Below are positions 2,625 to 53,512 of a stretch of 64,000 nucleotides of DNA, piece after piece. The DNA is taken from the NCBI RefSeq assembly GCF_902459465.1, contig NC_047062.1, positions 26,102,001 through 26,166,000 of the forward strand. The letters are read 5' to 3'. The position numbers and the translations under genes were made by a program. This DNA comes from Asterias rubens (taxonomy: Eukaryota). Position 1 is the first letter of the stretch, and every line of letters starts with the position of its first letter. A model generated the notes under the pieces. It did no database searches, was not told the DNA's origin, and saw only the letters and a program-made list of their open reading frames with translations.

Positions 2625-2763
2625 CTCGGCATCCAAGAACTTCAAAGGTAAAATAAGGATAGGAATTAGTCCAAGTGAGTGTCATTATTCGAAGGAATCT
2701 GGTCCTCAATATCTCAGGGAGGTTGACAGTTACTCGTTCACCACCATCCACATTCCCGTTAAA
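2625..2763 (-). CDS. Gene A exon 5: C-terminal part of F5/8 type C (discoidin) domain
   Basis: tttctgttttag|TTT...CGAG|gtgacg; 139 nt, phase 0 to 1; FNGNVDGGERVTVNLPEILRTRFLRIMTLTWTNSYPYFTFEVLGCR matches the FA58C C-terminus (F.GN.D...RI....W......FEVLGC); paralog at 25129-25267. Confidence 0.9.
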
Positions 2764-6880: not shown

Positions 6881-7089
6881 CCGTATGGTATCTCCGTCTG
6901 CATTCTCCAAGTTATGCCAGCTTTCAGATTCTCCCGTTGAACTGTACTTTACGCTGAAGGTTTGCATGGAGGCTCCTGGATGACCCTGTACTATCAGTCC
7001 AGTAACAACTGGGCCTGGCAGTCCTAGATCAACTTGAATCCAAGAGTCTGCTACATCCGCTACAGTTGGTATCCACCAGTGGCTGTTTC
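6881..7089 (-). CDS. Gene A exon 4: central part of FA58C domain
   Basis: tttttatacacag|GA...CGG|gtcaga; 209 nt, phase 1 to 0; NSHWWIPTVADVADSWIQVDLGLPGPVVTGLIVQGHPGASMQTFSVKYSSTGESESWHNLENADGDTIR (WIQVDL, VTG..VQG, F.V.YS...W motifs). Confidence 0.92.
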
Positions 7090-7599
7090 CTGTGTATAAA
7101 AACAAACGTCGCGGTTGAATGCTATTCTTTAGCAGAACTTAGAATCAATCCCTTATCCATTCCAATGAAACATTTTTTTCAAAGTAGATCATCACTTCCT
7201 ACAAATGGTATATTTCGATTATTTCGTCGCAAACATATAGGGGTTTATAATTAATGTAACACTTCCCTGAGGTCACTTCCATTATTACCTAGTAGTTTAA
7301 TTGGTATAATATGGACTCCATGGTCAGTGTGCTTCTTTTTGTGCAATATTTTAATGTGCTTTGATTTTTTAATTACCTCTCTGTTTTATTTAAACGGTTT
7401 ACTTTACACTGTTTTGTAATTTAGTTAGTAGTCTGAAATAAGCAGTTTTTTTATTAAAACCACAATAATAACTAGACATTAAGTGTTTGTGAACAAACAC
7501 GAAGCTGTTCCTTGTTGTTTTGCTTGGATTATGTGCTTCATTGCCCAAGGAATATATAACTGAAAAAAAGGTTTCAAAAAAGTTGTGTAGCTCTTGTTA

Positions 7600-11264: not shown

Positions 11265-11454
11265 ATTGTATGTCCTAGATACGCTTCCCCTTAGTTCGTA
11301 GCAAACACACAAAAAACATAATTTCAGACAATTACTGCTATCCACGCACAGGTTAAACTTAAACCAGGAGGGATAAAGTGAGTAGATAAGACTAGTATGT
11401 GGATCAGGTCAGCAAGTTCTGCCTGCAGTTAAACGGAAATGGAGTATGACTTGC

Positions 11455-11577
11455 CTTCATTGAGTCGAGCTTTTTGAGGAACATGTGACACCGAATCATA
11501 GGATGATGATGCAGTAATACTCCCATCAGGGATCGCCCCACTCTCCATTCCCAACGGTCCAATGGTACATGCTGGTC
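11455..11577 (-). CDS. Gene A exon 3: N-terminal part of FA58C domain (GC donor)
   Basis: cttatttcag|GA...GAAG|gcaagt; 123 nt, phase 1 to 1; GPACTIGPLGMESGAIPDGSITASSSYDSVSHVPQKARLNE is the classic FA58C start (PLGMESG.I.D..ITASS....ARLN). Confidence 0.92.
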
Positions 11578-12814
11578 CTGAAATAAGTCAATAAAACAAT
11601 CATTACATTAAAATCTAAAGTGAAAGTACATCCTTGCGTTTTTAGATGGTAAATCATTTACTTCCATTCTCTAGTTTAAAACAAAACGTAAGCAAAATTA
11701 TTTAGAACAAGGCTAGGTTTAACGAAGTTTATAATAATACTTGTTGTCCCCCCCCCTCTCTTTTGTTGGGGGGGGGGGGCTGGGAGGGGGTTGGAAGGAT
11801 GTACCTCTGAACGTTTTAAGGCACAATTTTGCAGTTTAAAAAAACTAAAACATAACAACAATTTGCATAATTGTGACAGCAATGCATAATACATCTTTTA
11901 AAAAAGTTGCTTGTAAATAATTGTTGGTTGGCGGCTTTTATCCTACAACACAAGCTTAAAACCTGTTCAAGTTATACAGATATGTCAACCTCCATTGGAG
12001 GAACAAAATAAAAAGGACCGGGGTCTTAACTTCCTTATATAGTCACTTTTATAATATAAATGATTTAGACTAAACCGGGTTTGGAGAAATGACTCAATTA
12101 ATTAATAAGCCATCATTAATTGACTCCTTCCCTTATAAAGGGATTTATACAGGACATAATATGGATGTCAGTGAATAATGCTTATATAGTTTTTAACTGA
12201 TCATAATTATAACCGGAAGTTTTCATCATGCAAAACAAACAACCTTTTTAAAATTTCTAGAAATAAATGACTTTTTTTAAATATAAATGTGATATTCATA
12301 TCAAATCGGCTCAATTCGGACTAGCCATCCTCACGACACTTCAGGGGCACACAATCACTGAATAATTGGTAATGGAACCACATTTAAAACCAACGATCTC
12401 TAGAATGATAGAAATAATATTGCAAACCTACCTTTTTATTATCTTAAAGATCTCTTTGAACATAGGTAACACAATATGCATTCCTTTCATATATTTCGAT
12501 AAAAACAATGAAGTAAGCCAATAAATGTCCACGTTCTTGGTCTTTGTTTTCTCAGAAAGTTCTGTATTAAACATGAACACGTTTTTGCTCCGTATATGTG
12601 TTTGGTAACTCGGATCTTTCCACTCTAATTTGAAGTGATTGCATAATAACAATCCTACAGTCATTAGAATGATCCGATATTTCTCTTTTCAATGAAAGCA
12701 AGCTTTGGTATTGAGGATGAACATGGAGAACACTACTTTTTTGCAAAAAATGTCCTTTGATAATACAAAATAATTCGTAAGAGAGAAAGGAATGAACTGA
12801 GTTTGAATAGTCAC

Positions 12815-12871
12815 CGTCTAAGTATGATCCTTGGGTTTCCTGGTTGCTGATTGGATGAGCCAGACAAAGTC
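12815..12871 (-). CDS. Gene A exon 2: end of signal peptide plus linker
   Basis: ttgtttgcag|GA...GACG|gtgact; 57 nt, phase 1 to 1; GLCLAHPISNQETQGSYLD; paralog at 27901-27957. Confidence 0.85.
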
Positions 12872-14810
12872 CTGCAAACAAAACAAAATACACCATTACT
12901 TCAATTGAAACCCTGCAGCAAAGGCCAATGGCATAGTACCTAATGTTCTAGTGGGGTTGCCAATCAACAAGGGGGTCAGTGTTGACTAGAAGGGGACGGG
13001 ACAAAACTCGGCCAGTATACTCTGTGTACTCGGTACGTCAATATTGGTAATGCTAGATGAAACCAAATTGAGCTTACACCCATACCATCCCCGAAAATGT
13101 TGTTTACAACACACTTACATTCAAAACAATTCGTTAAAAAGAAGAACAAAACTATTTTACATTTATTAAAAAAGTTTTGAAGCATGTAATAACAACGCAC
13201 GGGGCGTTGCAACCAAAAATGACCCAAGCTTGAGGGTTTCAAGTGTATGTTATTTTCTTTTCGATTTAGGATCAAGTCCAACATTCCTCCATTGTAGCAT
13301 ATTGTGTAACAGTTAACCTTTTTATAATGGTCTGTATACGTTTTGGTATATAAATATGGAAGCGTGTTGCTGCCACATGAATAAAACAAGATCGTGTACG
13401 TATACGATAAGTTATCGTGTATGTACATCATACGTTTAGCTTTATAATACGTTTAGCTTTATTGTGTACGTACACGATCAGAGAGAGTGGCGGCAACGCT
13501 TCCGCATATACTCTGAAAAGTAATGACAATAAAAACTTGCATTGTAAGAGTGCAGCAGGTAGTGGGATAATGCATTATCACCCAAACAAAAGACAAGGAG
13601 CGTTACCGCTGTAACCCTTCACAGTGCATTCCTATAAGGGATTTTTCTTCCTGCGTGGACATCGCTTCAGATTTTCGGAAATTTTCAAATTAAATTTGGC
13701 GATTTATAAATGAAATGTTCATGGTTGGGTTTTTCTGTATAGTCCTATCTACATTTATATTGGAATGAAACATTCGAACGATTCCACAAATCGAAAGTAA
13801 ACTTTCCCTTTAAGTTTGAAGAAAATGTTACCCTTGTAAGGTAATGATATGAAAAAGTGTCAAGCATTCTGGCTAATTCAACAGCATTACATAAACTATC
13901 ACAATAAAGAAGACAGTATTTTTTAGATAACCAATAGCAAAAAGGCTCTCGAGATTGAGTTATTGTTTAATAACTTTGAAACAAATATAATTGTCATATT
14001 GTTGATGTTAACATTTAATCAACAAACGTAAGAATCTTGCATTGATACTTGAAGTTTTGAATCGCTCCATAACACCCAATAATTGTGTACCACTAACAAC
14101 AATAGTTTTATTATCATTTGCATATACTTTGTGAGATGGTGGGTGGAGACAAGATTGACTACTTACACATTTTCCATTGACTGCTACAACACAGTTGTTC
14201 AGAAATGATTAACCAAATAAGAATAAATAATGACTTTTCGATCGTTATAAGTTTTATAAGTCTCAAAATGTATCGCCCCATTTCTCCCGAAAAAAAATCC
14301 GTTTGGTTTTCATGTTTTTGTTTTTCTCTGAAGGCATTTTGTCAGATGATGATCTTTCAAAACGGCCAATGCGCAAATTTTCTTATTTGATAATGTCTCA
14401 CGGACAATTCACAATGATACGGGCACAGTTTAATTTCGGGTCTCAAAAATCAAAGGGTTTTAGTTTTATTTACTTATAAATGAGGGGCAATACATTGAAT
14501 GAAATTTAACAACTTTATTCTCGAATATTTAAAATTAGCAATTTAAAATGCTATTCAAAATGTACGACCCCAAAAATAAGACATAGATAATAAGCATGAT
14601 GAAAGTGAGTGACTGGAAGAAAATCTGCACCAAAAGCCTTTTAAAGTTTCAATCAAGTAATGTTTTTATGAATCCCTTTTCATTTGACACGATAACATTC
14701 AAATACTCAATAAAACCAAGTTTAGTCCTACTTTACACTGAGATTAATTTGTTACAACTCAGTCATCTATGGATAATTATACGCTGAAGTTGATTCAACA
14801 AAACACTCAC

Positions 14811-14865
14811 CGACTAGAAGTACACTCAGGAGCAGCATCGAACTAGCGAAGGCACAAGTAGACAT
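14811..14865 (-). CDS. Gene A exon 1: start codon and signal peptide
   Basis: ATG...GTCG|gtgagt; MSTCAFASSMLLLSVLLV(G), hydrophobic signal; paralog at 35555-35609. Confidence 0.85.
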
Positions 14866-16425
14866 TTTAAGATGATTGTAGGTTCAAGAAATGATGGCAC
14901 AATATTCTATCACAATGCTCGGGCACGGTCCTACATAAAAATGACTGCTCAAATATCAATGCACGGGCAAGTCCTGTACGCAGTATGACTGCACTATATT
15001 ATATGTCAATGCACGGGAACGCTCCTCTGATCTGAAAATGTGTTATTGTACAAAATTGTCAATGATCCATGATCTTGAATCCGTGTACCGGGAATTTAAA
15101 TCGAAACACGCCGACTGGAAATAACAAATCAGTTTCAGTTAGACTGAAGTTCATAGTTTCAAGGTTGTTAGTTAAAGTGATACTTGCATAGAATATGCTC
15201 CATGGTTAATTTGTTTGAAACTGTTTTTGTTGTATCATTCTTTCAATGCCGAAAAGCAATGACCTACAATGTATCCAATGGACAACAATTTTATTTCACA
15301 TTTCAGCCTGCTCGGAGTCCCAACAATTACCCCTACAATAACTCGAATAATGATCGGACACCTTTAGTTAATGGTACCCGGCAAGTTTTTGGTACCCGGC
15401 CAAAATGTACTCGACTACACCACTGACCTCGAGAAGGACTGTCTGACTAATGTGAATCTAATGTCACTCATCACAATTTAACCTAGATGCGAAAAAGGTC
15501 GTTACTAACCATTGATCTCCATTATACTGGATATCAATGTTACCGACCAACAATTACTTTCCAGTCGGTAATTATTTTAACTAAACTCAGTATATTATTT
15601 TCTAAAGCTAATCTGCACTTCATTCAAAAGTAAGAGTAAATGTACAAAAAAATGAAAAGACTTCAAATAGCTCAAAACGTAGATGAATTGGCTCAACTCA
15701 ACGGCACGAAGCGTAATCTTAACCGCCACGACGAGCTCGAAGAAGCGCCCTCCACGATGCCTTATTATCAATGTTGCCAGCACAAATCTAGAAGGGGAGA
15801 TAAACACTACTTTCGTCTTAGCTTTATCATAAGAAAATCAAACTGTGTGATTAGGTTTAACCATGGATAAATAAACTTTATTATTTGCTCCGTGGTTTAA
15901 CCCTTTTTGTCTTCTTTTCTTCAGTTTGAGTGCAACTGCACCAGAACTAAATATTATGGGGTGGATGGGACCTGATGGATTCCGAGTGGATTGTTTGGTT
16001 GGTTGGGTGTATTGGTGGTTTACAGAGGAACACACCCCTTTCCTAACTAACAATAATCACACAATAGACAATAATTAATTAATACACATGAGATAGGTTT
16101 GACATAATCGTTCCCACCCGATGAAGAAGTGAGGTTTATTCTCACCAGCTCTGCCTTTTACAGGTCAACGTCCCTATTACAAAGTATATAAACCTTGCAT
16201 TGGCCGGCATCTTTGGTGAAATGTGCACGCATGAAAGGCTATCATTGGCTGGGAGTTATGGGCAGCACGTACTCGTGTGCGCTTTTTTTTGTCCATTGTT
16301 GTTTTAATCAAAGATGGTGGTCAATGACGTCATATGCAATCAATCTTTAACACTAGCAGTATATAACATTGCCCAAGGTTTAACCAGTTAAATCCCAGTA
16401 TGTGATTTTAGATCTACCCACTTAA

Positions 16426-16807
16426 AGGCAGTGGACACTATTGGTAATTGTCAAAAACTAGCCTTCACAGTTGGTGTATCTCAACATATGCATAAAGTAA
16501 CAAAACTGTGAAAATTTGAGCTCAATCGGTCATCGAACTTGCGAGATAATAATGAAAGAAAAAAACACCCTTGTCAAACGAAGTTGTATGCGTTTAGATG
16601 GTTGATTTCGAGACCTCAAGTTCTAAATTAATTGAGGTCTCGAAATAAAATTCGAGGAAAATTACTTCTTTCTCAAAAACTATGGCACTTCAGAGGGAGC
16701 CGTTTCTCACAATGGTTTATACCATCAACCTCTCCTCATTACTCGTCACCAAGAAAGGTTTTATGCTAATAATTATTTTGAGTAATTACCAATAGTGTCC
16801 ACTGCCT
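16426..16807. mobile_element. TTAA-flanked MITE family A (Kolobok-like)
   Basis: TIR AGGCAGTGGACACTATTGGTAATT; TTAA at 16422-16425 and 16808-16811; other copies at 43508, 50942, 55198. Confidence 0.85.
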
Positions 16808-17141
16808 TTAAACAACCCCTTTGAAATTCGTAGTTCTACTGAATTTTCAAAATGTTAACTAATGCTCAATATTTCTTGTTGCTTTGTAAACAATTTGCTT
16901 TGCTGTTCTTCAATTTCGCATACATTTTATAATAAAACCGTATATGCTTATTCTAAAAAAGAACGTGTTTTCGGAAAATTAGTTTGTTGTTGAAGTCCGG
17001 AGTCACCTTGTGATTGTGAACCGTTTTACTTTACATTTTACGATTTCGTCTGTGACAGGTGAGGAAAGTCCTTATGTTGTGGTTAAGTCATGCTTTCTGA
17101 TTGTTTCTTTTTGGAATAAAAAGAAAACACAACTTGTTTAA

Positions 17142-17937
17142 GAGTCAGTTCAGGTAAATAATTGACATACTTGCTCACGGTCAAAAAATGATTTTTTTTT
17201 TTTATACTTTGTGGGTGGAAGGGCCTTGGGGTGCAAGTAAACAAAATTGCATTTTCAATTCTATATATAGCCCGTTGCCATGGTTACGGCTCATTTTGTT
17301 TTCTGACCATTTTAGGCCGATTTTGGGGTCTGAAAAACTGGTTTTTAGCTCATATTTACAACTCCACCCCACCAAAATGCAAAATTATTTCAAAAAACCT
17401 TTTATATCACTACAAAGTATCATCCTTGGCCTTCCTTGAGAAAAAAAAGTATCAACAAATGGAAAGACCAATGTTGGCCCTAATCACAGCCGAAAAGAAA
17501 ATTTTCTGAGACCCCTGGCAAGTTGACATTTTGGGGTCCAAAAATAGGGTAAAAATGTCGATTTTGCAAGTTCTAAAAACATACTGTAATGCATGATGCA
17601 AAAATAGCACAAGGGTGATATTTAAAGCAATAATTTTTTTTCTCAAGGAAGGCCAAGGATGATAATTTGTAGTGATATAAAAGGTTTTTTGAAATAATTT
17701 TGCATTTTGGTGGGGTGGAGTTGTAAATATGAGCTAAAAACCAGTTTTTCAGACCCCAAAATCGGCCTAAAATGGCCAAAAAACAAAATGAGCCGTAACC
17801 ATGGCAACGGGCTATATATAGAATTGAAAATGCAATTTTGTTTACTTGCACCCCAAGGCCCTTCCACCCACTAAGTATAAAAAAAATTCATTTTTTGACC
17901 GTGAGCAACTATGTCATTTATTTACCTGAACTGACTG
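17142..17937. mobile_element. Foldback element, ~310-bp inverted arms, ~185-bp spacer
   Basis: 17142-17448 is the reverse complement of ~17633-17937 (gives mirror-image ORFs in the track); flanked by TTAA on both sides. Confidence 0.85.
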
Positions 17938-20468
17938 TTAAATAGTCAGCAGTGCTATGAAATTAGGCTTGCATTTTATAGTTATCATTTTCTACATATT
18001 AACTATAGTTTAGAGTCTGTAATAATACTAAGATATACGTACAACTTTAAAGACCATCACCATGCAGACACCATCTCTGTTTGGTCTCCTGTGACATGCA
18101 ACGAAAATAACCCCTATGGCATAGAGGGCCTGGTTATTCCACTCAAACCTATATCCTGAATTCGTATTGGCCCAACTGCAATCTGATTGAGTTCTGTAAC
18201 CAGATACACTCAATCATACTTTGCTTCTCTTGTCCTAATATATTGTATCCATTGTGTGCAAAGATAGACATGCTTGATGAGATAATATGGTATTGTGTTC
18301 ATAAGTAACTTGAGAGTTGAGAACAAAGGAAAAGGAGCGGTGAGTGGGACGCCCTCTTTCGTCTCACAGGCCTCTCATTAGAAGAGAAATAATTTGGATG
18401 TGATTCTCATCCTTAATTGCTCCGGTGTTTTGCACATTAATTATTAGCACCTCCCGTCACTCTACACTGTTCCCTTACAGACCATGCTTAAGTCCGCCTC
18501 TTTACAAATCCCCATTCCCTTAATCGTACAGAACTGATGCCATTCATTCTGAACGGACAGACCCACCGTGTACTCCAGACAGACGATTATCCTTGAAGTA
18601 CAGTATACCCCCACTACAAAGAAATGAGTAGCCTCCTATGTTTACTGATTATACCGATAAATATTATTCACGGTACACGTTTGATTAATGATTGTAATCG
18701 TGTAATAATAACAATTCTTGATTATAAGAAGCAATTAATATCTCCGTTTGATTGTTACATTTATCCTTACGAATAAAATGAAACGTCAATGCACAGGTCC
18801 TAACACTTGATACCAAAGTTAGGCAGACCATGACGTGTGTGATGTTTAACTTTGAAACACCACTGCCATTGGCGTTCCAGGCTCCTTCACGGTTTCTATA
18901 CAATGAAGAAAATAGACAAGTGAATATAATGACAAATATTACCAGGTGTGGACTTCAATGTCTAATCGGTATTGATATTCCTAGGCGGAATATTTCGTTG
19001 TTCAAAATGTCAAATTCAAGGCCATTGAATATACAGACCCATTGTTCTTACAGTGATGTCATCAGATTTGTTCGATGTTGACACATTTTACCCCGGAAGC
19101 CAACGAACACAATGGCATTTTACACAATGAGGTGGAGGCTTGTCATTTTCAACACTCACAATAATGAGGACTTTATCTTTCGGAAATTGAGTACACAGCA
19201 ACTTATATTTCCACATCTCCATCGCTTTGATTTGAGTTTTTATTGATATACATTGTGGCTAGAATTATTCGAAAATGATTTCAAGGTTAAGAAATAATTG
19301 AATTTAAAGCAACATGTCTAAATGTTTTGTCACTGGTTCAGCGTGCAGTAGACACGGACTGAGTTGGGGGGGGGGTTTATGATTGATATCTGCAGGCTCT
19401 CAGCAGAAGAAAACTTATTTTCAAGAGGAGTTAACAGTACGTCTCTGATTAGTTTAAACAACGCGTTTTCATTGTTATGTGTTGTCCATAATAAAACATA
19501 ATATAATTACCTTAACATTTACTGCAAAGATTCCTGCAAAAAGTAAACCGATTCTCGCCAACCTGTGATGTGAAAATCATTCCCGTAGGCAAAAACCAAA
19601 ATGAGTAACATGTTATTGCAACTAGATAGTTTCAGTAACGTGACAAAATAGTGTTTCGAAAAAGTAAAACCGGTTATTTCGAGGGTGTGAGCAACAATTG
19701 AAGATTGAAGATGTAATGCTCACAGACATGCACGTTGTGGAAATCTTCCTTTGAAATTTTACTTCATGTGTGTAGACTGTTGAGTCACACAAAGTGCAGA
19801 GGTTTGTGGATGGCCACGTCTTTATATGCAGACATCTGCAGCACTAAACTGACTTTTTAAACGACATATTAATGTACGTTAAAAACTGTGTTGTCATGTA
19901 GTTCAAATAATTGACTCGAAACCTCGTACAATTCTTTACACCCTAACAACACACAGGTCACTGGCAGAATCCAAGTCATAATCCCAGTATTTTTATATCA
20001 ATTACTGGATTGGCTTGACACAGAACTGGATCGGGCCTCTGGGACCAAGTATCCAGGTAAATTCTGGAAACGGGAATTTTCCAGAGTAAAGTATCGCCAT
20101 TCACGGTTAAATTAAATCTTAGGGTAAAATACCACCTTTTTGGTAGAAATATGTCATAACAGGTCAATTCTCGTCACATATATGCAAATACGGTTAGCGG
20201 CGATATGAAAGGGAAATCGCACAGTTAGCACGAAATCAGCTGCCGAGCAGCTCTATTTAATTGGGCCCTGAAGTCAGAGTTGCAGCATGGTGAACACATT
20301 TTTCTTGAGGATTTCTCAGAGAGTTTTATGCATTTTAAGATTTGTTGTTCAAGATTCATCACAGGGGGTTAAAGCAAGACTGCATAAGTTTGTGATCTAC
20401 TGAAGAAAGGTAGACAGCTTTTCCATCTCAACCTTGATGTAATCTCTAACTGGGATCACTAATAATCA

Positions 20469-20649
20469 CAGTGGTGCACCCGAAAGGGGGGGGGTGGGTC
20501 TAGGGCATTGATCCCAGCCCCTCCAAGGTCTTCAATTTGTTTGTTTGATTTATTTGTTTTGATTTTTTTTTGTTTTACAATCTTCGAAAGAAATGTTTGG
20601 GGAAAATATGGCCCATCCCCCAAAATAATAAATCCTGGGTGCGTCACTG
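20469..20649. mobile_element. Small MITE
   Basis: Imperfect 13-bp TIR CAGTGGTGCACCC / GGGTGCGTCACTG. Confidence 0.55.
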
Positions 20650-21719
20650 CTGATAATTTAAATTCTGGTTCTGGTTAAACCACACCAGCCCTCAACAAGA
20701 TAAAAATAGCAAACCATTTCAGTAACTTTAGAAACAGAAGAGTGAGTTTTGTTGGTGGATTTATTATGTAAAGTATATAAATGTACTAATTTGTAACCTA
20801 ACACCTGTACAAAAATAGTCATAAAAATGTAAATTTTGAAGAGCCCAACTGTTTCTTAGTGGATTCTGATAGAGGAAGACATGCTCTATCAAGCGATTTT
20901 TATTTCGTTGATTTTTGGAATGATACATTATTTCAAAAACTAGGTCAAAGGTCACGATAACAAATTAACTATCACAGTGGCCAACATTTCAGATAATTTA
21001 TTTTTGACAAAATAATTGATTTGAGCATGCAATTCTCATCATTTTGATATCAAAGTTGCATAATATGCGATAAAAATTGACATGGTTATGACATATTTTT
21101 ACCAAAAAGGTGGTATTTTTCCCTAAATGTATCAGATTTTAATGGTTTCTGCCCTGACCACATGGTAAGTCCGATCGGGATAAAAAAAGGTGTGCATTCA
21201 TTGCTCATAATGACCTTTAATCATATACGGATTGTTATAACGCCTTATTGCAAGGACCATGGTAAAAGAACAAGCTGTGTTGAATTAGAGTCTAACGTGG
21301 GGGAGTAGTTTGTAGTGGTGTTATTTTTTTATATTGACTTGGTTAACAAATAACTGGCTTTTAAGTGCGCCACCAAGAGTTTGCAAAGGAGAGGTAAATG
21401 TGTAAAGACCGTTCAAGTCCCCGGCAAAACAAAACAAAGTCTTTTATTTTTAACCTTTGATTTTTTTATCTGAACACAATCGGCAAACAAAGTATTAGTA
21501 AAATTGTTACTACGTCAGTTCCATTATTAAAGTTAACACAAGATAATTTCACAGTCTAGTGTGAGCAGGGAAGTCCATAATATTTCGCTAGGCTCCTTAC
21601 GAAAAAGGTCGTGCTACTACACTTGCTTCCCACATGTAATTTGAAATATATTAGAATGATGATGGCTCCGGTTTGCAAAGGGTTTTTGATAAGTACCATT
21701 TGGCTACATCCGTAATTAC

Positions 21720-22031
21720 CTTTATAACAGGTTACTCCGGCAGTTTCTGTGTTTCTGCACTTTGGTTTTTTCCAGCAATGTGATGGACACTCTGTGATTT
21801 TGGCCTCGGAACCGTCACACGCAACCCGATCCATTAAGTTGGGACCACTCCCTTGACCGAAGAAAGCATCCGACTTTGCCTGCCTGGCACCAGGGTAACC
21901 CAGCTGTCTGCAGACGACCCCAGCATCAGTCAAGTCCCACTCATTGTCGCAGATGGCGCCCCATGTACCATTCACATTGACCTCAACCCTTCCACTTCCC
22001 CTGGTTGGTCCGTCCACAAGCCTTACAGTGT
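21720..22031 (-). CDS. Gene B exon 7: SRCR domain 2
   Basis: cttccctatcttaacaag|AC...AAAG|gtaatt; 312 nt, phase 1 to 1; DTVRLVDGPTRGSGRVEVNVNGTWGAICDNEWDLTDAGVVCRQLGYPGA...DRVACDGSEAKITECPSHCWKKPKCRNTETAGVTCYK. Confidence 0.95.
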
Positions 22032-22191
22032 CTTGTTAAGATAGGGAAGAGTGAATAGAAACAATGTAGCCGAGTCGAAATGGAAAGAGGGGTAGACAAT
22101 TTTACCACGATCAGTTTTAAGCTTGACATTTTCTGCATTAAAACCACTAAAAAATAATAAAGAGTAAACTCAACCGGATTGTGCTCACGTA

Positions 22192-23660
22192 TATAAACAA
22201 CCATAGTTTGTATAGCGAAGCGGGCACCTTAGTAGGCGTAGGTTTGTTTGTATATAAACAACCAGAGTTTTTACAGCGAAGCGGGCAATTTAGTAGGCGT
22301 AGGTTTGTTTGTTTATAGACAACCAGAGTTTGTATAGCGAAGCGGGCAACTTAGTAGGCGTAGGTTTGTTTGTATATAGACAACCGGAGTTTGTATAGCG
22401 AAGCGGGCAACTTAGTAGGCGTAGGTTTGTTTGTATATAAACAACCAGAGTTTGTAAAGCGAAGCGGGCAACTTAGTAGGCGTAGGTTTGTTTGTATATA
22501 AACAACCAGAGTTTATATAGCGAAGCGGGCAACTTAGTAGGCGTAGGTTTGTTTGTATATAGACAACCATAGTTGGTATAGCGAAGCGGGCAACTTAGTA
22601 GGCGTAGGTTTGTTTGTATATAGACAACCAGAGTTTGTATAGCGAAGCGGGCAACTTAGTAGGCGTAGGTTTGTTTGTATATAGACAACCGGAGTTTGTA
22701 TAGCGAAGCGGGCAACTTAGTAGGCGTAGGTTTGTTTGTATATAAACAACCAGAGTTTGTAAAGCGAAGCGGGCAACTTAGTAGGCGTAGGTTTGTTTGT
22801 ATATAGACAACCGGAGTTTGTATAGCGAAGCGGGCAACTTAGTAGGCGTAGGTTTGTTTGTATATAAACAACCAGAGTTTGTAAAGCGAAGCGGGCAACT
22901 TAGTAGGCGTAGGTTGATTTGTATATAGACAACCAGAGTTTGTATAGCGAAGCGGGCAACTTAGTAGGCGTAGGTGTGTTTGTATATAGACAACCGGAGT
23001 TTGTATAGCGAAGCGGGCAACTTAGTAGGCGTAGGTTTGTTTGTATATAAACAACCAGAGTTTGTAAAGCGAAGCGGGCAACTTAGTAGGCGTAGGTTTG
23101 TTTGTATATAGACAACCAGAGTTTGTATAGCGAAGCGGGCAACTTAGTAGGCGTAGGTTTGTTTGTATATAGACAACCATAGTTGGTATAGCGAAGCGGG
23201 CAACTTAGTAGGCGTAGGTTTGTTTGTATATAGACAACCATAGTTGGTATAGCGAAGCGGGCAACTTAGTAGGCGTAGGTTTGTTTGTATATAGACAACC
23301 AGAGTTTGTATAGCGAAGCGGGCAACTTAGTAGGCGTAGGTTTGTTTGTATATAGACAACCGGAGTTTGTATAGCGAAGCGGGCAACTTAGTAGGCGTAG
23401 GTTTGTTTGTATATAAACAACCAGAGTTTGTAAAGCGAAGCGGGCAACTTAGTAGGCGTAGGTTTGTTTGTATATAGACAACCAGAGTTTGTTTAGCGAA
23501 GCGGGCAACTTAGTAGGCGTAGGTTTGTTTGTATATAGACAACCATAGTTGGTATAGCGAAGCGGGCAACTTAGTAGGCGTAGGTTTGTTTGTATATAGA
23601 CAACCATAGTTGGTATAGCGAAGCGGGCAACTTAGTAGGCGTAGGTTTGTTTGTATATAG
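22192..23660. repeat. 61-bp minisatellite, ~24 copies, intronic
   Basis: Unit gacaaccagagtttgtatagcgaagcgggcaacttagtaggcgtaggtttgtttgtatata. Confidence 0.98.
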
Positions 23661-23880
23661 AATTGGAAGAAAATAAGAGACGTATTTTGTGAGAAAGATT
23701 ATTGACAACTCATCCTTCGAGTTATCAATCGATGCGGTTATTACCTTAAATAATGAAGATATCGATTTGAGAAATTGAATCATGAAGTTAAAAAAAAATA
23801 GGTTTAGTTTCAAACGTCGAAGGCTTTCTGATAATCTTCACAAAAAAAAGCCACAAGACCATCGACCCACATCGACTTAC

Positions 23881-24189
23881 TTGGTTTGCAGACTACTCCA
23901 GCAGTGCTGGTGCATGGATCGTTTTCCCTGCAAAGAAATGGGCACCAGGAAAGATATGGCTCCGTCCCTTTACAAGCAACTCGATCCATTACAATAGGAA
24001 GTTCTGTCGCTCCGTAAAATGATCCAATCTTTGCCTCACTTGCCTCTAGGAAACCAAGCTGCCAGCATACAGTAGTCGCATCTTGTATGTCCCAGTTTGT
24101 ATCACATACCGCACCCCAAGCACCGTCATGGTAAATCTCGACTCGACCTCTAAGTGCGTCATCACCTCCAGCTAGCCGGATGATACCAT
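23881..24189 (-). CDS. Gene B exon 6: SRCR domain 1
   Basis: ttttattgaag|AT...CCAA|gtaagt; 309 nt, phase 1 to 1; DGIIRLAGGDDALRGRVEIYHDGAWGAVCDTNWDIQDATTVCWQLGF...DRVACKGTEPYLSWCPFLCRENDPCTSTAGVVCKP. Confidence 0.95.
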
Positions 24190-25128
24190 CTTCAATAAAA
24201 CAATACAATGTTTGTATCACACCTAAAAAGTATGTTTTGCCCTATCTTGATAAAAAAAACACATTTTAAGGGGGATGAAATAGCTTAAACTAAATTAGAT
24301 TGGTTTAAAAAAGTTGGTTTTGACAGCAGCCTAAATGAGTCCAGTGTAGTTGAGGCATGGATGTGGACGGGAAGGTTATTTCATCAGAGAGTGGGTGTGA
24401 CAATTGATGAGGAGGCGCATTTTCTGTAGCTAGTGCGGGGGATATGACCAGAGTTGAATTCCAGGTGGGCAGTAAATGATGATCGGAGAACACGAGACGT
24501 AGGTTGCTTCATGTGAATAAGTCATTCTGAGATACATTTAGGGGCCAGACCATGTTTAACTTTGTATGCAAAAGTAAGAACTTAAAATCGGATCCTTTTA
24601 GACACCAAGGAGCCAGTGTAAGGAGCGCAGAAGGGGAGTGATGTGATCTGATTTCTGTGATCTGATGTGATGTGATCTGTGCGAGACACTGAGTTCTGTA
24701 TTAATGGAGGGGAGCAATGTTGGATTGATGTAGAGACTGTTGCAGTGATCGAGGTAAAACAAAGTAGTGAAAGCATGAACCAGTCGTTCAGTGGTACTTT
24801 GTTCTAAGTAGCGTCTAAGCTTTCCGATCTTGTGGATTCCAACAGGCAGCGGAACGACATGTGTTCTTGGTGAGTTTGTGTAGGGTTAAATGGTGATCAA
24901 GGGTGACTCCGAGATCTCTAACGGTCTAAATTGTTTGATATTTTTTATATTAGCATGGATTACATATACAAAATATGCTTTGAACTTATAACAGCTTATA
25001 ACCGTTAACTTCATGTAAGATCCAGAAAATGTTATTCTTGAGCGTCAAGAAATGTCTATAGTGATGTGTTTTATAAGAATTACTAATTTGACATGTTTAT
25101 ATAGCATAATGCCGAGTTTTAACGTTAC

Positions 25129-25267
25129 CTCGGCATCCAAGAACTTCAAATGCAAAGTAAGGATAAGAATTAGTCCAAGTCAGTGTCATTATTCGAAGGA
25201 ATCTGGTCCTCAATATCTCAGGGAAGGTGACAGTTACTCGTTCACCATCAGCGACATTCCCGTTAAA
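25129..25267 (-). CDS. Gene B exon 5: C-terminal part of FA58C domain
   Basis: ctcttttag|TTT...CGAG|gtaacg; 139 nt; FNGNVADGERVTVTFPEILRTRFLRIMTLTWTNSYPYFAFEVLGCR. Confidence 0.92.
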
Positions 25268-25329
25268 CTAAAAGAGAAAAACAGTAATTTTTCGTTTGAA
25301 GGTTAATTTGTAATAAATAATATATTGAT

Positions 25330-25520
25330 ATTATAGTACCCAGTGACACCCATGGCGCTTCAACATTCCCCATCACTTGCCCATGTCAGCTCCCTTGGGA
25401 TTGTATAGCCTGTGCTGCCACATAGCGCACCAAGCTAAATCGATCCCTGCCCTTATCATGGTATCCGTTTACCCGTTGAAGAGAGAATCAATTAAATAAG
25501 AGTGTCTTGAGCAAGTAAAC
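25330..25520 (-). mobile_element. Probable SINE body/3' fragment
   Basis: ctcaagacac...gcagcac...cccaagggagctga...gaagcgcc resembles deuterostome SINE core/tail segments; recalled similarity only. Confidence 0.35.
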
Positions 25521-26025
25521 AAGTGTTAACTTTGATCTTACCATTAACAGGGTTATTTTACGTGCAGGCGTTTTTGTTGAATATTATTATTATAATAAAA
25601 ATTGTACAATATTTAACAATTGTGTCAATTTGGCTAAAACAAACATTGTATGATAGTAAACAAAACAAAAAACAAAAACATCATACAAACACGTTTTTGG
25701 AAACGTTATTGATGTTATAATTGATGTTAAATTTGCATCGGGGATAAAGGGGGAAACAAATATATATATATATTATTGTTGTTGTTGAAAATAAATATTA
25801 AAAAATGTAGACAATCCATGTAGACCGGTCTCCAGTCCAGAGAATTGATATTTGTATAAATCCAATTATTATGTCTAATTGCCCAGTCCCTCGGAAAAGA
25901 GATATCTGTATAAACCAAACCCTCCGAACCAGTCAACACTCGCAAATTACAAAGGTACCTAAATCAAACACTAGCGTCGCTAATCAAGACTAGGGAGCTC
26001 CTAGATACAAGAGATGGTATCTGAC

Positions 26026-26237
26026 CTGTACGGTTTCTCCGTCTGCATTCTCCAAGTCATGCCAGCTTTCAGATTCTCCCGTTGAACTGTACTTAACGCT
26101 GAAGGTTTCCATGTAGTATGATGAATGACCCTGTACAATCAGTCCAGTAACGACTGGGCCTGGTAGTCCAAGATCAACTTGAATCCAAGAGTCTGCTGCA
26201 TCCTCTGCAGTTGGTATCCATTTGGTATAGCTGCTTC
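26026..26237 (-). CDS. Gene B exon 4: central part of FA58C domain
   Basis: tttttatacacag|GA...CAG|gtcaga; 212 nt; SSYTKWIPTAEDAADSWIQVDLGLPGPVVTGLIVQGHSSYYMETFSVKYSSTGESESWHDLENADGETVQ. Confidence 0.92.
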
Positions 26238-26496
26238 CTGTGTATAAAAACAAACGTCACTGATGAATGCTATTCTTTAGCAGAACTTAGAATCAATCCC
26301 TTATCCATTCCAATAAATTGTTATTTTCAAAGTTGATCATCACTTCCTACAAATGGTATATTTCGATTATTTCGTCGCAAACATATAGGGGTTATAATTA
26401 ATGAAACACTTCCCTGAGGCCACTTCCATTATTACCTAGTAGTTTAATTGCTATAATATGGACTCCATGGTCAGTGTGCTTCTTTTTGTGCTATAT

Positions 26497-27097
26497 TTTT
26501 TCACGTTTAGCAAATGCTCCTCTGGGTTCGTCACGTCTTTCAGATACCTTCTTCGACTTCCAACTAGCTGGACAAATTGTTGGGACGGCGTCGTGTTTAA
26601 GAATGGCTCTTCTCGTCATGTCAAATGAGTGGTGTATCCCGGATTCGAAGCACGACGGCTCGAAGTGTTTCGCTGCATAGCGCTGAAAAAGACGTCGGAC
26701 CGGACCACTTTGCTCTAATTAATCTGACTTTCGCAGCCCACAACCGCCTATACTTGGGATCTGCAGGAAACAGATGAAGACTGACCCCATCTTTAGTTGT
26801 TTTGCTGCATCCAGCAGCAATACACCTGGTCGGCATTGCCGGAAAAATGCCAGAAAAAAACCTTTTTCGCAGCGTACAAACTCACGTCTTAGAATTACAT
26901 GTACTTTTGCACGTGTTTTTATCTACGCATCGAGGGGGCCTACGTCACAAAAGGGGTAGGCGGAGTCAACCCCCCAGCACTTAATTAATTTTTTTTACAT
27001 ATAAATCATGACAAACAATTGCTTACAAAATTGTTTTATTGTTAATAAACATATACTCTTATGTTTAAAAGAAAAGAAATCCTATTTCCAGGTGCCT
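26497..27097 (-). mobile_element. 5' fragment of THAP-domain DNA transposon (Kolobok-like), frameshifted
   Basis: MPTRCIAAGCSK...SLHLFPADPKYRRLW...W.GPT...LCSE then +1 frameshift to HFEPSCF...LKHDAVPTI = C2CH THAP motif; terminus AGGCACCTGGAAATAGG at 27097 next to a near-TTAA site; absent from the paralogous gene A intron. Confidence 0.8.
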
Positions 27098-27422
27098 CTA
27101 AATAAGCTTTTTGTATTCCTTTTAATTTGAATGTACATTGTTTTGTGTTTCAGCCAGTAGGCTGCATGCAATAAGCAGTTTTTTAATTAAAACCACAATT
27201 TTTATAATAATAATAATAATAATTGTATGTCTAGACACTCTTCCTTAGTTCGTAGCAAACACAAAAAACTCACAAAAATTTCTGACACAAAGATACATAA
27301 GGACTGCTATCCATGGAACCATCAACTTGAACCAGGAGGGATAAAGTGAGTAGATAAGACTAGTATGTGGATCAGGTCAGCAAGTTCTGCCTGCAGTTAA
27401 ACGGAAATGGAGTATGACTTGC

Positions 27423-27542
27423 CTTCATTGAGTCGAGCTTGTGGAGGTAAATATGTCGCCGAATGAGATGATGATGCAGTAATACTCCCATCAGGGATCG
27501 CCCCACTCTCCATTCCCAACGGTCCAATGGTACATGCTGGTC
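27423..27542 (-). CDS. Gene B exon 3: N-terminal part of FA58C domain (GC donor)
   Basis: cttatttcag|GA...GAAG|gcaagt; 120 nt; GPACTIGPLGMESGAIPDGSITASSSHSATYLPPQARLNE. Confidence 0.92.
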
Positions 27543-27900
27543 CTGAAATAAGTCAATAAAACAATCATTTCATCAAATCTAAAATCAAGATCTTCTGTTT
27601 CCAATTATGATACAGTATGGAGGATGAACATAAATAAAACTGCAGCTTTGTAGTAAAGTTGATGGTTGTCATTTGTGCTCATAACAGGCTTGAATGTTTT
27701 GTGCTCAAGCAGGGTATAGTACACAGTCCACTAAAGTCGCAATTGGGGCTGACTACTTTACAAGCAATTCAATTAAATGGTGTTTACTGACAATTTATTA
27801 AATTTTTAATCCCGTTTAATAATTATTTAGTTTAAACTTATAAGATAAACACCAGTTTTGCAAGAAGGGAGGTATATTTAGACTGCATTTTAATGTTCAC

Positions 27901-27957
27901 CGTCTGAATATGATCCCGGGGTTTCCTGGTTGCTGATTGGATGGGCCAGACAAAGTC
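27901..27957 (-). CDS. Gene B exon 2
   Basis: ttgttgcag|GA...GACG|gtgaac; 57 nt; GLCLAHPISNQETPGSYSD. Confidence 0.85.
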
Positions 27958-28297: not shown

Positions 28298-28555
28298 NNN
28301 NNNNNNNNNNNNNNNNNNNNNNNNNNNNNNNNNNNNNNNNNNNNNNNNNNNNNNNNNNNNNNNNNNNNNNNNNNNNNNNNNNNNNNNNNNNNNNNNNNNN
28401 NNNNNNNNNNNNNNNNNNNNNNNNNNNNNNNNNNNNNNNNNNNNNNNNNNNNNNNNNNNNNNNNNNNNNNNNNNNNNNNNNNNNNNNNNNNNNNNNNNNN
28501 NNNNNNNNNNNNNNNNNNNNNNNNNNNNNNNNNNNNNNNNNNNNNNNNNNNNNNN
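28298..28555. other. Assembly gap or masked run (258 N)
   Basis: Run of N. Confidence 1.
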
Positions 28556-28686: not shown

Positions 28687-28881
28687 NNNNNNNNNNNNNN
28701 NNNNNNNNNNNNNNNNNNNNNNNNNNNNNNNNNNNNNNNNNNNNNNNNNNNNNNNNNNNNNNNNNNNNNNNNNNNNNNNNNNNNNNNNNNNNNNNNNNNN
28801 NNNNNNNNNNNNNNNNNNNNNNNNNNNNNNNNNNNNNNNNNNNNNNNNNNNNNNNNNNNNNNNNNNNNNNNNNNNNNNNNN
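28687..28881. other. Assembly gap or masked run (195 N) hiding the LINE 3' junction
   Basis: Run of N directly abutting the LINE 3' UTR. Confidence 1.
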
Positions 28882-32000: not shown

Positions 32001-32860
32001 AGTTTAGTTTGCCAATTAGTCCAGAACAGGGAGATGATGTGTTTGTAGTTTTCGTCTTGGAGGAGAGTGTTGTTAAAGTGCCAGTAGACGCTTCCCTTGG
32101 GACGATGTGAGCTAGATTTACAAGCAACACTGACTGCACTGTGATCTGACAGGCTGCAAGGGATTATGTTGCATTTAGAAACAGTGGAAGCCAAATGCGA
32201 AGGTAGGTATATGCGATCAAGCCTCGCTTTCGACATAGTTATATTGTTGTTACGGAGCCAGGTGTATTTCCTTTGTTCTGGGTTATGTTCTCGCCAAATA
32301 TCGCAAAGAGTGTTTTTGTTGACCAGATTCGACAGGGTGGTGGCTATTTTGTGCCTTTTCTCGTGAGTGATAGCAAGGCGGTCAAGAGAGGGATTGTGGG
32401 TACAGTTAAAATCACCGTCTATAAGTATTTCACCTCGATCATGCTGTGCACAGTGGCGTTCCAGAGCTTCCAACATTTTTCCTGCCTCTACGTCTCCTTG
32501 TGGAACAAGTACATTATACAGATGATATTTATTAGAATCAAGTTCAATTTCAGTGTAAAGAGCGTAACTTTGATAAAGAACAGCATGACTAAAAAGCACA
32601 GATATATTATTTTTGACAAGAGTAGCCACGCCCGATCCCCTCGTTTTGCCTGGAGTACTATTGATTTGATGTTGCCAATGTTTCAACACAGTTGAGGAGG
32701 TAGGTGAATCATTGACTTCTTGTAAGAAGACTACGTCAGGGTTAAAACAAGACTGTTTAATGAACTCATGGAATGAGGTATTACGAGTCGGATTGGAGCA
32801 TCCTCCCGTGTTTATTGATACGAGAGAGAACGCCATACTGACTAACAGAAAATAGTTCAT
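29062..32860 (-). pseudogene. Tx1 ORF2 (endonuclease/reverse transcriptase)
   Basis: FLQE, GDFN, RLDRIY, SDH (APE); PGLDG, WRPVSLLNTDYKI, LDQKKAFD, GIRQGCPLS, YADD (RT); CGWC...HLFFHC. In-frame loss of ~27 aa between GLDGL and TLP (~31418) and a frameshift near 29220 (true C-terminus ...IEYRYY...FLKKW...EWTL* ends 29062). Confidence 0.92.
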
Positions 32861-35554: not shown

Positions 35555-35609
35555 CGACTAGAAGTACACCCAGCAGCAGCATCGAACTAGCGAAGGCACT
35601 AGTAGACAT
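35555..35609 (-). CDS. Gene B exon 1: start codon and signal peptide
   Basis: ctcaccATG...GTCG|gtgagt; MSTSAFASSMLLLGVLLV(G). Confidence 0.85.
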
Positions 35610-52627: not shown

Positions 52628-53512
52628 TTATCTCAGATCATGGCAATCTCGAATCAACTTAATCTAAGATCCTGGCAGTGATCTCAGATCCAGGCAATGA
52701 TCTCAGATCCAGGCAATGATCTTAGATCTAGACAAGGTTCATAGGTCATGTCAATGATCTCAGATCCAGGCAATGGGTTCAGATCTAGACAATGATCTCA
52801 GATCCAGGCTATGATCTCAGATTTAGACAATGATCTCAGATTCAGACAATGATCTCAGATCTAGACAATGATCTCAGATCTAGACATGATCTCAGATCAA
52901 GGCAATGAGTTCAGATCTAGGCAATGATCTCAGATCCAGGCAATGATCTCTGATCTAGACATGATCTCAGATCTAGGCAATGATCTCAGATCTAAACAAT
53001 GATCTCAGATCCAGACGATGATATTAGATCCAGGCAATGATCTCAGATCCAGGCAATGATCTCAGATCCAGGCAATGATCTCTGATCAAGACATGATCTC
53101 AGATCTAGGCAATGATCTCAGATCTAAACAATGATCTCAGATCCAGACGATGATCTCAGATCCAGGCAATGATCTCAGATCCAGACGATGATCTCAGAAC
53201 TAGACAATGTTCATAGGTCCTGGCAATGATCTCGGATCCAGGCAATGAGTTCAGATTCAGGCAATGATCTCAGATCTGAGCAATGATCTCAGATCCAGGC
53301 AATGATCTCAGATCTAGGCAATGATCTCAGATCTAGGCAATAATCGCAGATCTAGACAATGTTCATAGGTCCTGGTAATTATCTCAGATCCAGGCAATGA
53401 TCTCAGATCTAGGCAATGATCTAAGATCCTGGCACTGATTTCAGATCAAGACAATGATCTTAGATCTAGACAATGATCTCAGATCAAGACAAAGATCTCG
53501 GATTCTGGCAGT
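52628..53512. repeat. ~19-bp minisatellite, ~45 copies
   Basis: Unit aatGATCtcaGATCcaggc / aatGATCtcaGATCtagac. Confidence 0.95.

What the first reader, a model, noticed from the sequence alone, without database searches (positions are those of the whole stretch)
11455..27542. Discoidin paralogs diverge almost only in the ligand-binding loops while flanking introns are identical
Seen: across ~230 bp spanning exon 3 and nearby intron the two genes are identical, except for a ~30-nt patch: SSSYDSVSHVPQKAR vs SSSHSATYLPPQAR (3-nt indel). In exon 4, changes cluster at GNSHWWIPTVADV vs GSSYTKWIPTAEDA (3-nt indel) and QGHPGASMQ vs QGHSSYYME, while WIQVDLGLPGPVVTGLIVQG and FSVKYSSTGESESW are unchanged. 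Established: these positions correspond to the variable spike loops of FA58C/discoidin domains (factor V/VIII C2, neuropilin b1, DDR) that contact lipid, glycan or peptide ligands. Inference: a diversifying recognition-receptor family (immune or gamete recognition) with loop-restricted positive selection or patchwork gene conversion.
Basis: partly seen in the sequence, partly recalled or inferred. Interest (0 to 1): 0.78.

Follow-up and report, generated by a model that had tools for sequence, protein, structure and literature searches.

The report
Starfish discoidin paralogs differing in binding loops
Two neighbouring starfish genes for secreted discoidin-plus-SRCR proteins have been partly re-copied onto each other, yet stay sharply different in the three loops that, in related proteins, hold the ligand; this is a clean but not unprecedented sign that the two copies bind different things.

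Summary
Two same-strand (minus) tandem genes each encode a signal peptide and a 156-aa discoidin (FA58C) domain on three phase-1 exons. In copy B, RNA contigs show two SRCR exons spliced on after it.

Around exon 3 the copies are identical for 103 nt and 111 nt, including 27 and 93 nt of intron. These runs flank a 29/26-nt island with 9 substitutions and a 3-nt indel. Further into the same intron identity falls to about 75%.

Amino-acid changes hit 16 of 24 positions in the three loops that match factor V spikes 1-3 and neuropilin b1 loops L1-L3. Elsewhere they hit 13 of 133 (p = 8e-9).

"Introns identical" holds only next to exon 3. The intron before exon 4 is 95% identical, and the introns around exon 5 cannot be aligned.

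Best reading: an old duplication, later gene conversion of the scaffold, and binding loops left as islands of divergence, most likely by selection for different specificities. Positive selection is not shown: loop omega is 1.8 (not significant), and the loops are no more diverged than unconverted intron.

No immune or gamete role was tested. Other notes of this scan report loop-variable discoidin arrays elsewhere in this genome. This is a new member of a known kind, of moderate interest.

The parts
14811..14865 (-). Gene A exon 1, coding part: start codon plus hydrophobic signal-peptide-like stretch, ends in phase 1
   Evidence: ATG, GT donor and homology to copy B. Not checked with RNA or a signal-peptide predictor.
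12815..12871 (-). Gene A exon 2: end of the signal peptide and a short linker, phase 1-1
   Evidence: AG acceptor, GT donor, open frame, homologous to B 27901-27957.
11455..11577 (-). Gene A exon 3: first third of the discoidin domain. Holds loop 1 (patch 1, 11473-11501). Followed by a GC-AG intron.
6881..7089 (-). Gene A exon 4: middle of the discoidin domain. Holds loop 2 (7052-7090) and loop 3 (6962-6988).
2625..2763 (-). Gene A exon 5: last third of the discoidin domain, ends in phase 1. Any SRCR exons of gene A would lie beyond the window start.
35555..35609 (-). Gene B exon 1, coding part (signal-peptide-like). Intron 1 holds a LINE and two assembly gaps.
   Evidence: By homology to gene A; not checked with RNA.
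27901..27957 (-). Gene B exon 2
   Evidence: By homology; open frame.
27423..27542 (-). Gene B exon 3. Holds loop 1 (island 27441-27466). Followed by a GC-AG intron.
   Evidence: The RNA joint 26236>27422 fits a GC..AG intron, and an exact RNA contig covers the exon in run X1.
26026..26237 (-). Gene B exon 4. Holds loop 2 (26197-26238) and loop 3 (26107-26133).
   Evidence: RNA joints to exon 3 and exon 5.
25129..25267 (-). Gene B exon 5: end of the discoidin domain
   Evidence: RNA joints 25263>26022 (cut +4) and 24189>25129.
23881..24189 (-). Gene B SRCR domain 1 exon, phase 1-1
   Evidence: Pfam SRCR E = 5.6e-23. RNA joints on both sides. Splice sites read.
21720..22031 (-). Gene B SRCR domain 2 exon, phase 1-1. 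The transcript continues about 1 kb further into exon(s) I did not locate.
   Evidence: Pfam SRCR E = 1.9e-29. RNA joint 22027/22031>23881 and a 1247-nt RNA contig that leaves the stretch at 21718. Donor read.
11362..11604 (-). Homogenised tract in gene A (partner in B: 27330-27569): two identical runs of 103 and 111 nt around the loop-1 island

Best explanation
These are two tandem, same-strand paralogous genes, said by other notes of this scan to be from the starfish Asterias rubens. Each encodes a secreted or surface protein with a signal peptide, one discoidin (FA58C) domain on three exons, and then SRCR domains. Two SRCR exons are shown for copy B.

The duplication is old. Where the introns can still be aligned they differ by about 20-25%.

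Interlocus gene conversion later re-homogenised parts of the discoidin exons and the intron next to them. The clearest case is a 243-nt tract over exon 3.

The three loops that form the ligand-binding end of the discoidin barrel were left out of this homogenisation. They remain about as diverged as unconverted DNA, and almost all their differences change the protein.

The most likely reason is that the two copies have different binding specificities. Conversions that would erase the loop differences are then removed by selection (the 'peak of divergence' model). Once the islands were diverged, with indels, they would also hinder heteroduplex formation on their own.

Shown here: gene structure, splicing and transcription of copy B, the identity tracts, and the clustering of replacements in the loops. 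Inferred: secretion, loop function (by homology only), selection as the cause, and any biological role.
For: - Gene models and the intact 156-aa domain in both copies.
- RNA contigs join B exon 3, 4, 5, SRCR-1 and SRCR-2, and match copy B exactly in run X1.
- Identical runs of 103 and 111 nt that include 27 and 93 nt of intron, against about 75% identity further into the same intron and 78-81% in the exon 1 and exon 2 blocks.
- Island of 9 substitutions plus a codon indel in 29/26 nt; clustering p about 7e-8.
- Replacements hit 16 of 24 loop positions against 13 of 133 elsewhere, p = 8e-9. Loop omega is 1.84 against 0.40 for the scaffold. The N:S ratio is 18:3 against 13:10, p = 0.049.
- The same contrast holds in exon 4 against a third close sequence, L001 (binding-face pN 0.25-0.29 against 0.04).
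- Four close exon-4 sequences each have their own loop 3.
- An RNA contig of a second organism equals B exon 3 except for four changes, all inside loop 1.
- Loop homology to factor V spikes and neuropilin L1-L3. Topology from the DDR1 structure paper.
- The model itself, a peak of divergence in duplicates under conversion: PMC3924837.
- The order discoidin exon, SRCR, SRCR recurs on a 14.6-kb contig of a more distant relative.
Against: - Omega above 1 in the loops is not significant (p = 0.52).
- Loop divergence is not higher than that of unconverted intron (p = 0.26 and 0.33). Retention of old, unconstrained divergence would therefore be enough.
- Conversion can mimic selection; this caveat is stated in PMC3924837.
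- Only two full copies were compared, and there are no population data.
- Thirteen replacements lie outside the three loops. By my topology inference about five of them (101, 117, 118, 125, 126) are away from the binding end.
- The C-terminal binding-face loop (residues 141-149) does not vary.
- No 3D model was made.
- Ligand, tissue and function are unknown.
Confidence: 0.58

Rival explanations
1. Neutral reading. The loops are simply unconstrained and have drifted since an old duplication. Conversion tracts homogenised the flanks and stopped at the loops because the diverged, indel-bearing islands block heteroduplex formation, or by chance. The copies have not diverged adaptively in specificity.
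For: - Loop divergence (pN 0.35; island 9 of 26 nt) is statistically the same as distal intron divergence (25 of 100).
- Loop omega is not significantly above 1.
- Discoidin loops vary with indels across the wider family, as in most discoidin proteins.
Against: - 18 of 21 loop changes are non-synonymous, against 13 of 23 in the scaffold (p = 0.049).
- Both conversion runs end within a few nt of loop 1.
- A key pocket residue equivalent (Asp53, aligned to neuropilin D320) is kept in both copies while its neighbours change. That argues the site is still in use.
- A contig of a second organism differs from B only inside loop 1.
Confidence: 0.25
2. Patchwork reading. The divergent patches were pasted in by very short conversion tracts from other family members elsewhere in the genome, so each copy is a mosaic of loop cassettes on a common scaffold.
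For: - P0064, an exon-4 fragment from a marine metagenome, combines the A-type loop 2 with a B-like downstream intron and its own loop 3.
- L001 has the A-type start of loop 2 and a loop 3 that mixes A-like and B-like residues.
- The island has sharp edges inside otherwise identical sequence.
Against: - No donor copy or loop-like cassette exists in the 64-kb window; there is no 12-mer match outside the two genes.
- No other close paralog was recovered from the protein libraries.
- Tracts of 26-29 nt would be unusually short.
- The mosaic fragments come from other organisms and may reflect lineage-specific change.
Confidence: 0.14
3. Assembly artefact. The identical tracts come from collapse or cross-polishing of two similar copies.
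For: Two assembly gaps lie about 1 kb from B exon 3 (28298-28555 and 28687-28881).
Against: - RNA contigs match copy B exactly across exons 3-5 and the SRCR exons. Other contigs differ from B by counts close to the A-versus-B differences there.
- The two loci have different intron sizes and repeats.
- Exon-4 words of copy A are held by several runs.
Confidence: 0.03

Closest known systems
Discoidin (F5/8 type C) ligand-binding domains: factor V/VIII C2, neuropilin b1/b2, DDR1/2
   Same: All three exon pieces match neuropilin and factor VIII chains collinearly. The domain has the terminal Cys pair and the conserved core motifs. The three variable patches align with factor V spikes 1-3 and neuropilin L1-L3. 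The Asp aligned with neuropilin D320 is kept.
   Different: - Loop 3 is several residues shorter than in neuropilin b1.
- There is one domain, not a tandem pair.
- It is followed by SRCR domains.
- The ligand is unknown.
- No hydrophobic Trp-Trp or Leu-Leu membrane spikes are evident; copy A has a Trp-Trp in loop 2.
Peak of divergence in duplicates under gene conversion (human red/green opsin exon 5; Teshima and Innan model, reviewed in PMC3924837)
   Same: The paralogs lie in tandem, with matching exons about 16-22 kb apart. Flanks, including intron, are homogenised. A sharp local peak of divergence sits at sites that determine specificity in related proteins.
   Different: There are three peaks in one domain. 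The functional effect of the sites is only inferred by homology. There are no population data to show ongoing conversion.
Echinoderm SRCR proteins and 'DMBT1-like' SRCR plus discoidin proteins (crown-of-thorns DMBT1-like secreted protein, PMC10448888; starfish ApSRCR1 opsonin, cited in PMC13409769)
   Same: A secreted starfish protein that combines F5/8 type C and SRCR domains. SRCR proteins of starfish are linked to coelomocytes and opsonisation.
   Different: The crown-of-thorns protein has many repeats and EGF domains. Here there is one discoidin domain and two SRCR domains so far. No protein-level or immune data exist for these two genes.
Diversified invertebrate recognition families (snail FREPs, amphioxus VCBPs, sea urchin 185/333); recalled from memory, not tested
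   Same: Tandem paralogs whose variation is concentrated in the ligand-contacting part of a lectin-like or Ig-like domain.
   Different: No evidence here for a large family, high allelic diversity, somatic change or immune induction.

Membership tests
F5/8 type C (discoidin, FA58C) domain, Pfam PF00754 | Profile match | tested here: met
   The exon-4 piece of B alone scores 32.8 bits (cut-off 28.2, E = 8.7e-8). The A piece scores 25.3 bits as a fragment. The whole spliced domain could not be scanned because it has no reference.
F5/8 type C (discoidin, FA58C) domain, Pfam PF00754 | Full-length collinear similarity to solved discoidin domains | tested here: met
   Against the 155-residue neuropilin-1 b1 chain 1kex_A, exon 3 aligns to chain residues 6-37 and exon 5 to 109-153. 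Exon 4 aligns to the b1 part of a longer neuropilin-1 chain from residue 45 on, and more strongly to its b2 domain. Factor VIII C2 matches likewise.
F5/8 type C (discoidin, FA58C) domain, Pfam PF00754 | Cys near each end of the domain (disulfide closing the barrel) | tested here: met
   Cys3 and Cys155 are present in both copies. The bond itself is inferred.
F5/8 type C (discoidin, FA58C) domain, Pfam PF00754 | Jelly-roll barrel with protruding loops at one end, variable residues on that end | not tested
   No model was made, because the spliced protein has no reference and I did not type it. Placement rests on sequence alignment and published topology.
SRCR domain, Pfam PF00530 | Profile match above cut-off | tested here: met
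   E = 1.9e-29 and 5.6e-23, both covering nearly the whole 100-position model. Both exons are spliced to the discoidin exons in RNA contigs.
Duplicates under interlocus gene conversion with a selected peak of divergence | Identity tracts far above background that include non-coding DNA | tested here: met
   103-nt and 111-nt identical runs with 27 and 93 nt of intron, against about 75% identity further into the same intron.
Duplicates under interlocus gene conversion with a selected peak of divergence | Peak coincides with sites that set function | tested here: inconclusive
   The peaks coincide with the ligand loops of homologous domains. No functional data exist for this protein.
Duplicates under interlocus gene conversion with a selected peak of divergence | Selection, not chance or heterology, keeps the peak (fixed differences in the peak, shared polymorphism in the flanks) | not testable with these tools
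   This needs population resequencing of both loci.
Diversifying immune-type recognition family | Significant excess of replacement change (omega above 1) at the binding sites | tested here: inconclusive
   Loop omega is 1.84, p = 0.52. Loop dN against domain dS gives p = 0.001, but against intron divergence p = 0.26. Exon-4 pairs with L001 give binding-face pN/pS ratios of about 1.4-2.5 from small counts.
Diversifying immune-type recognition family | Many paralogs or alleles with different loops | tested here: inconclusive
   There are two copies in the window. Close exon-4 fragments P0001 and P0064 each have a different loop 3. A second pair, P0008 and P0028, shows 3 of 7 differences in loop 3. 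The searches found no more.
Diversifying immune-type recognition family | Expression in immune cells or induction by challenge | not tested
   RNA runs hold the transcript, but tissue and treatment are coded.

The most novel reading that the evidence does not exclude
Starfish carry families of secreted discoidin-SRCR receptors, and perhaps other discoidin families as hinted by other notes of this scan. In these families the three ligand loops behave as hypervariable regions: they are kept different or shuffled among tandem paralogs and alleles, while gene conversion keeps the scaffold uniform. That would be an echinoderm counterpart of loop-diversified immune receptors.
Probability: 0.2. Interest if true: 0.65.

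Novelty: new member of a known kind. Interest (0 to 1): 0.4.

Why it matters
If the loop islands are kept by selection, these two genes are a compact natural experiment. The scaffold is nearly constant and the three binding loops differ, so it should be possible to work out what a starfish discoidin-SRCR protein recognises. They would also add an echinoderm case to the short list of clear 'peak of divergence' examples under gene conversion.

The case also carries a warning. A loop-restricted excess of replacements next to identical introns need not mean positive selection, because conversion lowers the apparent neutral divergence around the loops.

Tried and rejected
- Full-length relatives. 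The exhaustive representative search with exon 4 gave only exon-sized reading frames from unannotated contigs.
- More DNA copies from JGI metagenomes: none found.
The same applied to P0008 and P0028.
- Loop donor cassettes inside the window: none.
- A structured RNA that could explain the identical intron stretch: Rfam finds nothing there.
- The assembly accession that holds L001: not found in any paper, so its species is unknown.
- C-terminus of gene B: no convincing exon or membrane span among the reading frames at 15.4-21.7 kb. Left open.
- 3D model: not run, because the spliced domain has no reference and I did not type long sequences. The tool also returns no coordinates.
- Reading the two genes as alternative exon sets of one gene: rejected, because each has its own start codon and signal-peptide exon.
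Full report
**What is there.** The quoted peptides all lie on the minus strand. A self-comparison of the window finds five short homologous blocks between 2.6-15 kb and 25-36 kb, in the same order and orientation. Read with splice sites, these give two tandem genes.

Gene A:
- exon 1 (coding part) 14811-14865
- exon 2 12815-12871
- exon 3 11455-11577
- exon 4 6881-7089
- exon 5 2625-2763

Gene B:
- exon 1 35555-35609
- exon 2 27901-27957
- exon 3 27423-27542
- exon 4 26026-26237
- exon 5 25129-25267
- two SRCR exons, 23881-24189 and 21720-22031

Exon 1 begins with ATG and a hydrophobic stretch that looks like a signal peptide. This is an inference; I ran no predictor. Exons 3-5 form a phase 1-1 unit that encodes an intact 156-aa domain in both copies. 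The intron after exon 3 has a GC donor in both copies.

**Domain identity.** Pfam calls the exon-4 pieces F5/8 type C and the two downstream reading frames SRCR (E = 1.9e-29 and 5.6e-23). The three discoidin exon pieces match neuropilin b1/b2 and factor VIII C2 chains in the right order along the domain. No other discoidin or SRCR exon is present in the window. Any SRCR exons of gene A would lie beyond the window start.

**Transcription and splicing.** Contigs of four RNA runs were laid on 21550-27545. They show the joints exon 3 to exon 4 (consistent with the GC-AG intron), exon 4 to exon 5, exon 5 to SRCR-1, and SRCR-1 to SRCR-2.
- In run X1 the contigs match copy B with no differences across exon 3, exon 5 and both SRCR exons.
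- Other contigs differ from B by 7-10 letters over exons 4 and 5. That is close to the number of A-versus-B differences there, so copy A or a near relative is probably transcribed too.
- Several runs hold part of A's exon 4 words.
- A 1247-nt contig continues about 1 kb beyond SRCR-2 into exon(s) I could not place. The C-terminus, and therefore whether the protein is secreted or membrane-bound, is open.

**The pattern.** In the exon 3 block the copies are identical for 103 nt (27 nt of intron 2 plus 76 nt of exon). An island follows, 29 nt in A and 26 nt in B, with 9 substitutions and a codon indel. They are then identical again for 111 nt (18 nt of exon plus 93 nt of intron 3). After that the same intron drops to about 75% identity with indels.
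- Ten events confined to 30 of 243 columns has p about 7e-8.
- Identical runs of this length have p between 1e-14 and 6e-6 at the 75-89% identity seen elsewhere.
- The exon 1 and exon 2 blocks are 81% and 78% identical.
- The 263 nt before exon 4 are 95% identical.
- The introns around exon 5 are not alignable beyond about a dozen bases.

So the duplication is old and parts of it were homogenised later.

**Substitution counts.** Over the domain there are 13 synonymous and 31 non-synonymous differences (omega 0.73). I defined the three loops by family-conserved anchor motifs rather than by where the copies differ: columns 25-35, 40-46 and 78-83.

| Measure | Loops | Rest of domain |
|---|---|---|
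| Positions replaced | 16 of 24 | 13 of 133 |
| pN | 0.35 | 0.043 |
| pS | 0.21 | 0.10 |
| Omega | 1.84 | 0.40 |

- The difference in replaced positions gives Fisher p = 8e-9.
- The N:S ratio differs between loops and rest (18:3 against 13:10, p = 0.049).
- Omega above 1 in the loops is not significant (p = 0.52).
- Loop dN exceeds domain-wide dS (p = 0.001). It does not exceed the mismatch rate of the unconverted distal intron (25 of 100; p = 0.26), and neither does the island itself (9 of 26; p = 0.33).

The loops are therefore as diverged as old, unconverted DNA, not demonstrably more. The contrast there is one of constraint, not recent conversion.

**Where the loops sit.**
- In factor V-C2 numbering, W26/W27 mark spike 1 and L79 marks spike 3, with K23, Q48 and S78 in the pocket between the spikes (PMC11098723). 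These fall in or next to patches 1, 2 and 3.
- The neuropilin b1 ligand site is made of three loops, with contacts at Y297/N300/W301, N313/T316/D320 and S346-Y353 (PMC8945599).
- In the tool alignments, residue 26 (Tyr in A, His in B) aligns with the Tyr that is probably neuropilin-2 Y299 (the counterpart of neuropilin-1 Y297), Asp53 aligns with D320, and residues 80-81 align with S346/K347. I assigned these residue numbers myself, by matching the aligned chain letters to the published contact residues.
- Asp53 is kept in both copies while residues 51, 52 and 54 change.
- From the DDR1 structure paper's description of which loops lie at the binding end, I infer that about 24 of the 29 variable positions are at or next to that end. 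About five (101, 117, 118, 125, 126) are not.
- The C-terminal binding-face loop (141-149) does not vary.

This placement is by alignment and published topology, not by a model.

**Other copies.** Public libraries gave only exon-sized fragments.
- Four close exon-4 sequences (A, B, L001/P0001, P0064) share an almost invariant scaffold, but each has its own loop 3.
- P0064 joins an A-type loop 2 to a B-like downstream intron.
- Against L001, binding-face pN is 0.25-0.28 and scaffold pN is 0.044.
- An RNA contig of a second organism is identical to B exon 3 except for four changes, all in loop 1, which alter two residues.
- A more distant pair from one metagenome sample differs at 7 of about 53 scaffold-to-end residues, 3 of them in loop 3.
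- One of that pair's contigs shows the same order: discoidin exon, SRCR, SRCR.

**Interpretation.** The pattern fits duplicates that exchange sequence by gene conversion while a small target region stays diverged. Fawcett and Innan call this a peak of divergence. They illustrate it with opsin exon 5 and warn that conversion can mimic positive selection (PMC3924837).
- I favour selection for different binding specificities as the reason the loops escape conversion (0.58).
- A neutral version is a serious rival (0.25): unconstrained loops, with heterology stopping the tracts.
- Short-tract pasting from other paralogs cannot be excluded (0.14). There are no donors in the window.
- An assembly artefact is unlikely given the RNA matches (0.03).

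**Context.** Other notes of this scan name the genome as Asterias rubens. I did not verify this.
- Two unchecked first-reader notes report loop-variable discoidin arrays on other pieces of the genome.
- A crown-of-thorns starfish 'DMBT1-like' secreted protein combines F5/8 type C, EGF and SRCR domains (PMC10448888).
- Starfish SRCR proteins are linked to coelomocytes and opsonisation (PMC13409769).
- Nothing here tests an immune or gamete role.

**Verdict.** This is a new member of a known kind, of moderate interest.

Noticed in passing
window 27423 / 11455 (donor of intron 3 in both genes): The intron after discoidin exon 3 uses a GC donor (AAG|GCAAGT) in both paralogs. RNA joints in two runs fit a GC-AG intron. 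The 93 nt after the donor are identical between the copies.
   Followed up: partly
window 29180-32860 (-), with 32961-34464 (-): An intact 1226-aa LINE reading frame (endonuclease, reverse transcriptase, zf-RVT), with upstream ORF1-like frames, sits in intron 1 of gene B next to two assembly gaps (28298-28555, 28687-28881).
   Followed up: partly
window 26574-27101, ORF 26621-26836 (-): A THAP-domain reading frame lies inside intron 3 of gene B. RNA contig depth here is hundreds of times that of the exons, with many variant joints, so this is a transcribed repeat family rather than part of the gene.
   Followed up: partly
window 22189-23661: A 61-bp tandem repeat, 24 copies at 95% identity and strongly G-over-C skewed, fills most of the intron between the two SRCR exons.
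   Followed up: no
window 4421-5212: A 51-bp tandem repeat, 15.5 copies, in the intron between exons 4 and 5 of gene A. It is absent from gene B.
   Followed up: no
window 54416-54506 (-): A 91-nt tRNA match (61 bits), for which ARAGORN reports an irregular four-base anticodon call. It may be an intron-bearing tRNA gene or a tRNA-derived repeat.
   Followed up: no
window 17137-17452 and 17630-17942: A 316-bp inverted repeat at 96% identity lies between the two genes, a foldback or MITE-like element.
   Followed up: no
window 56581-57714 and 62750-63998; 52662-53503: Direct duplication of about 1.1 kb at 92-93% identity, and a 19-bp tandem array of 44 copies.
   Followed up: no
L004 (ENA ERZ1764477, 2267 nt): A metagenome contig carries the SRCR-2 exon of gene B, with a reading frame 99% identical to the window's at protein level. 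DNA of this animal or a very close relative is therefore present in that sample.
   Followed up: no
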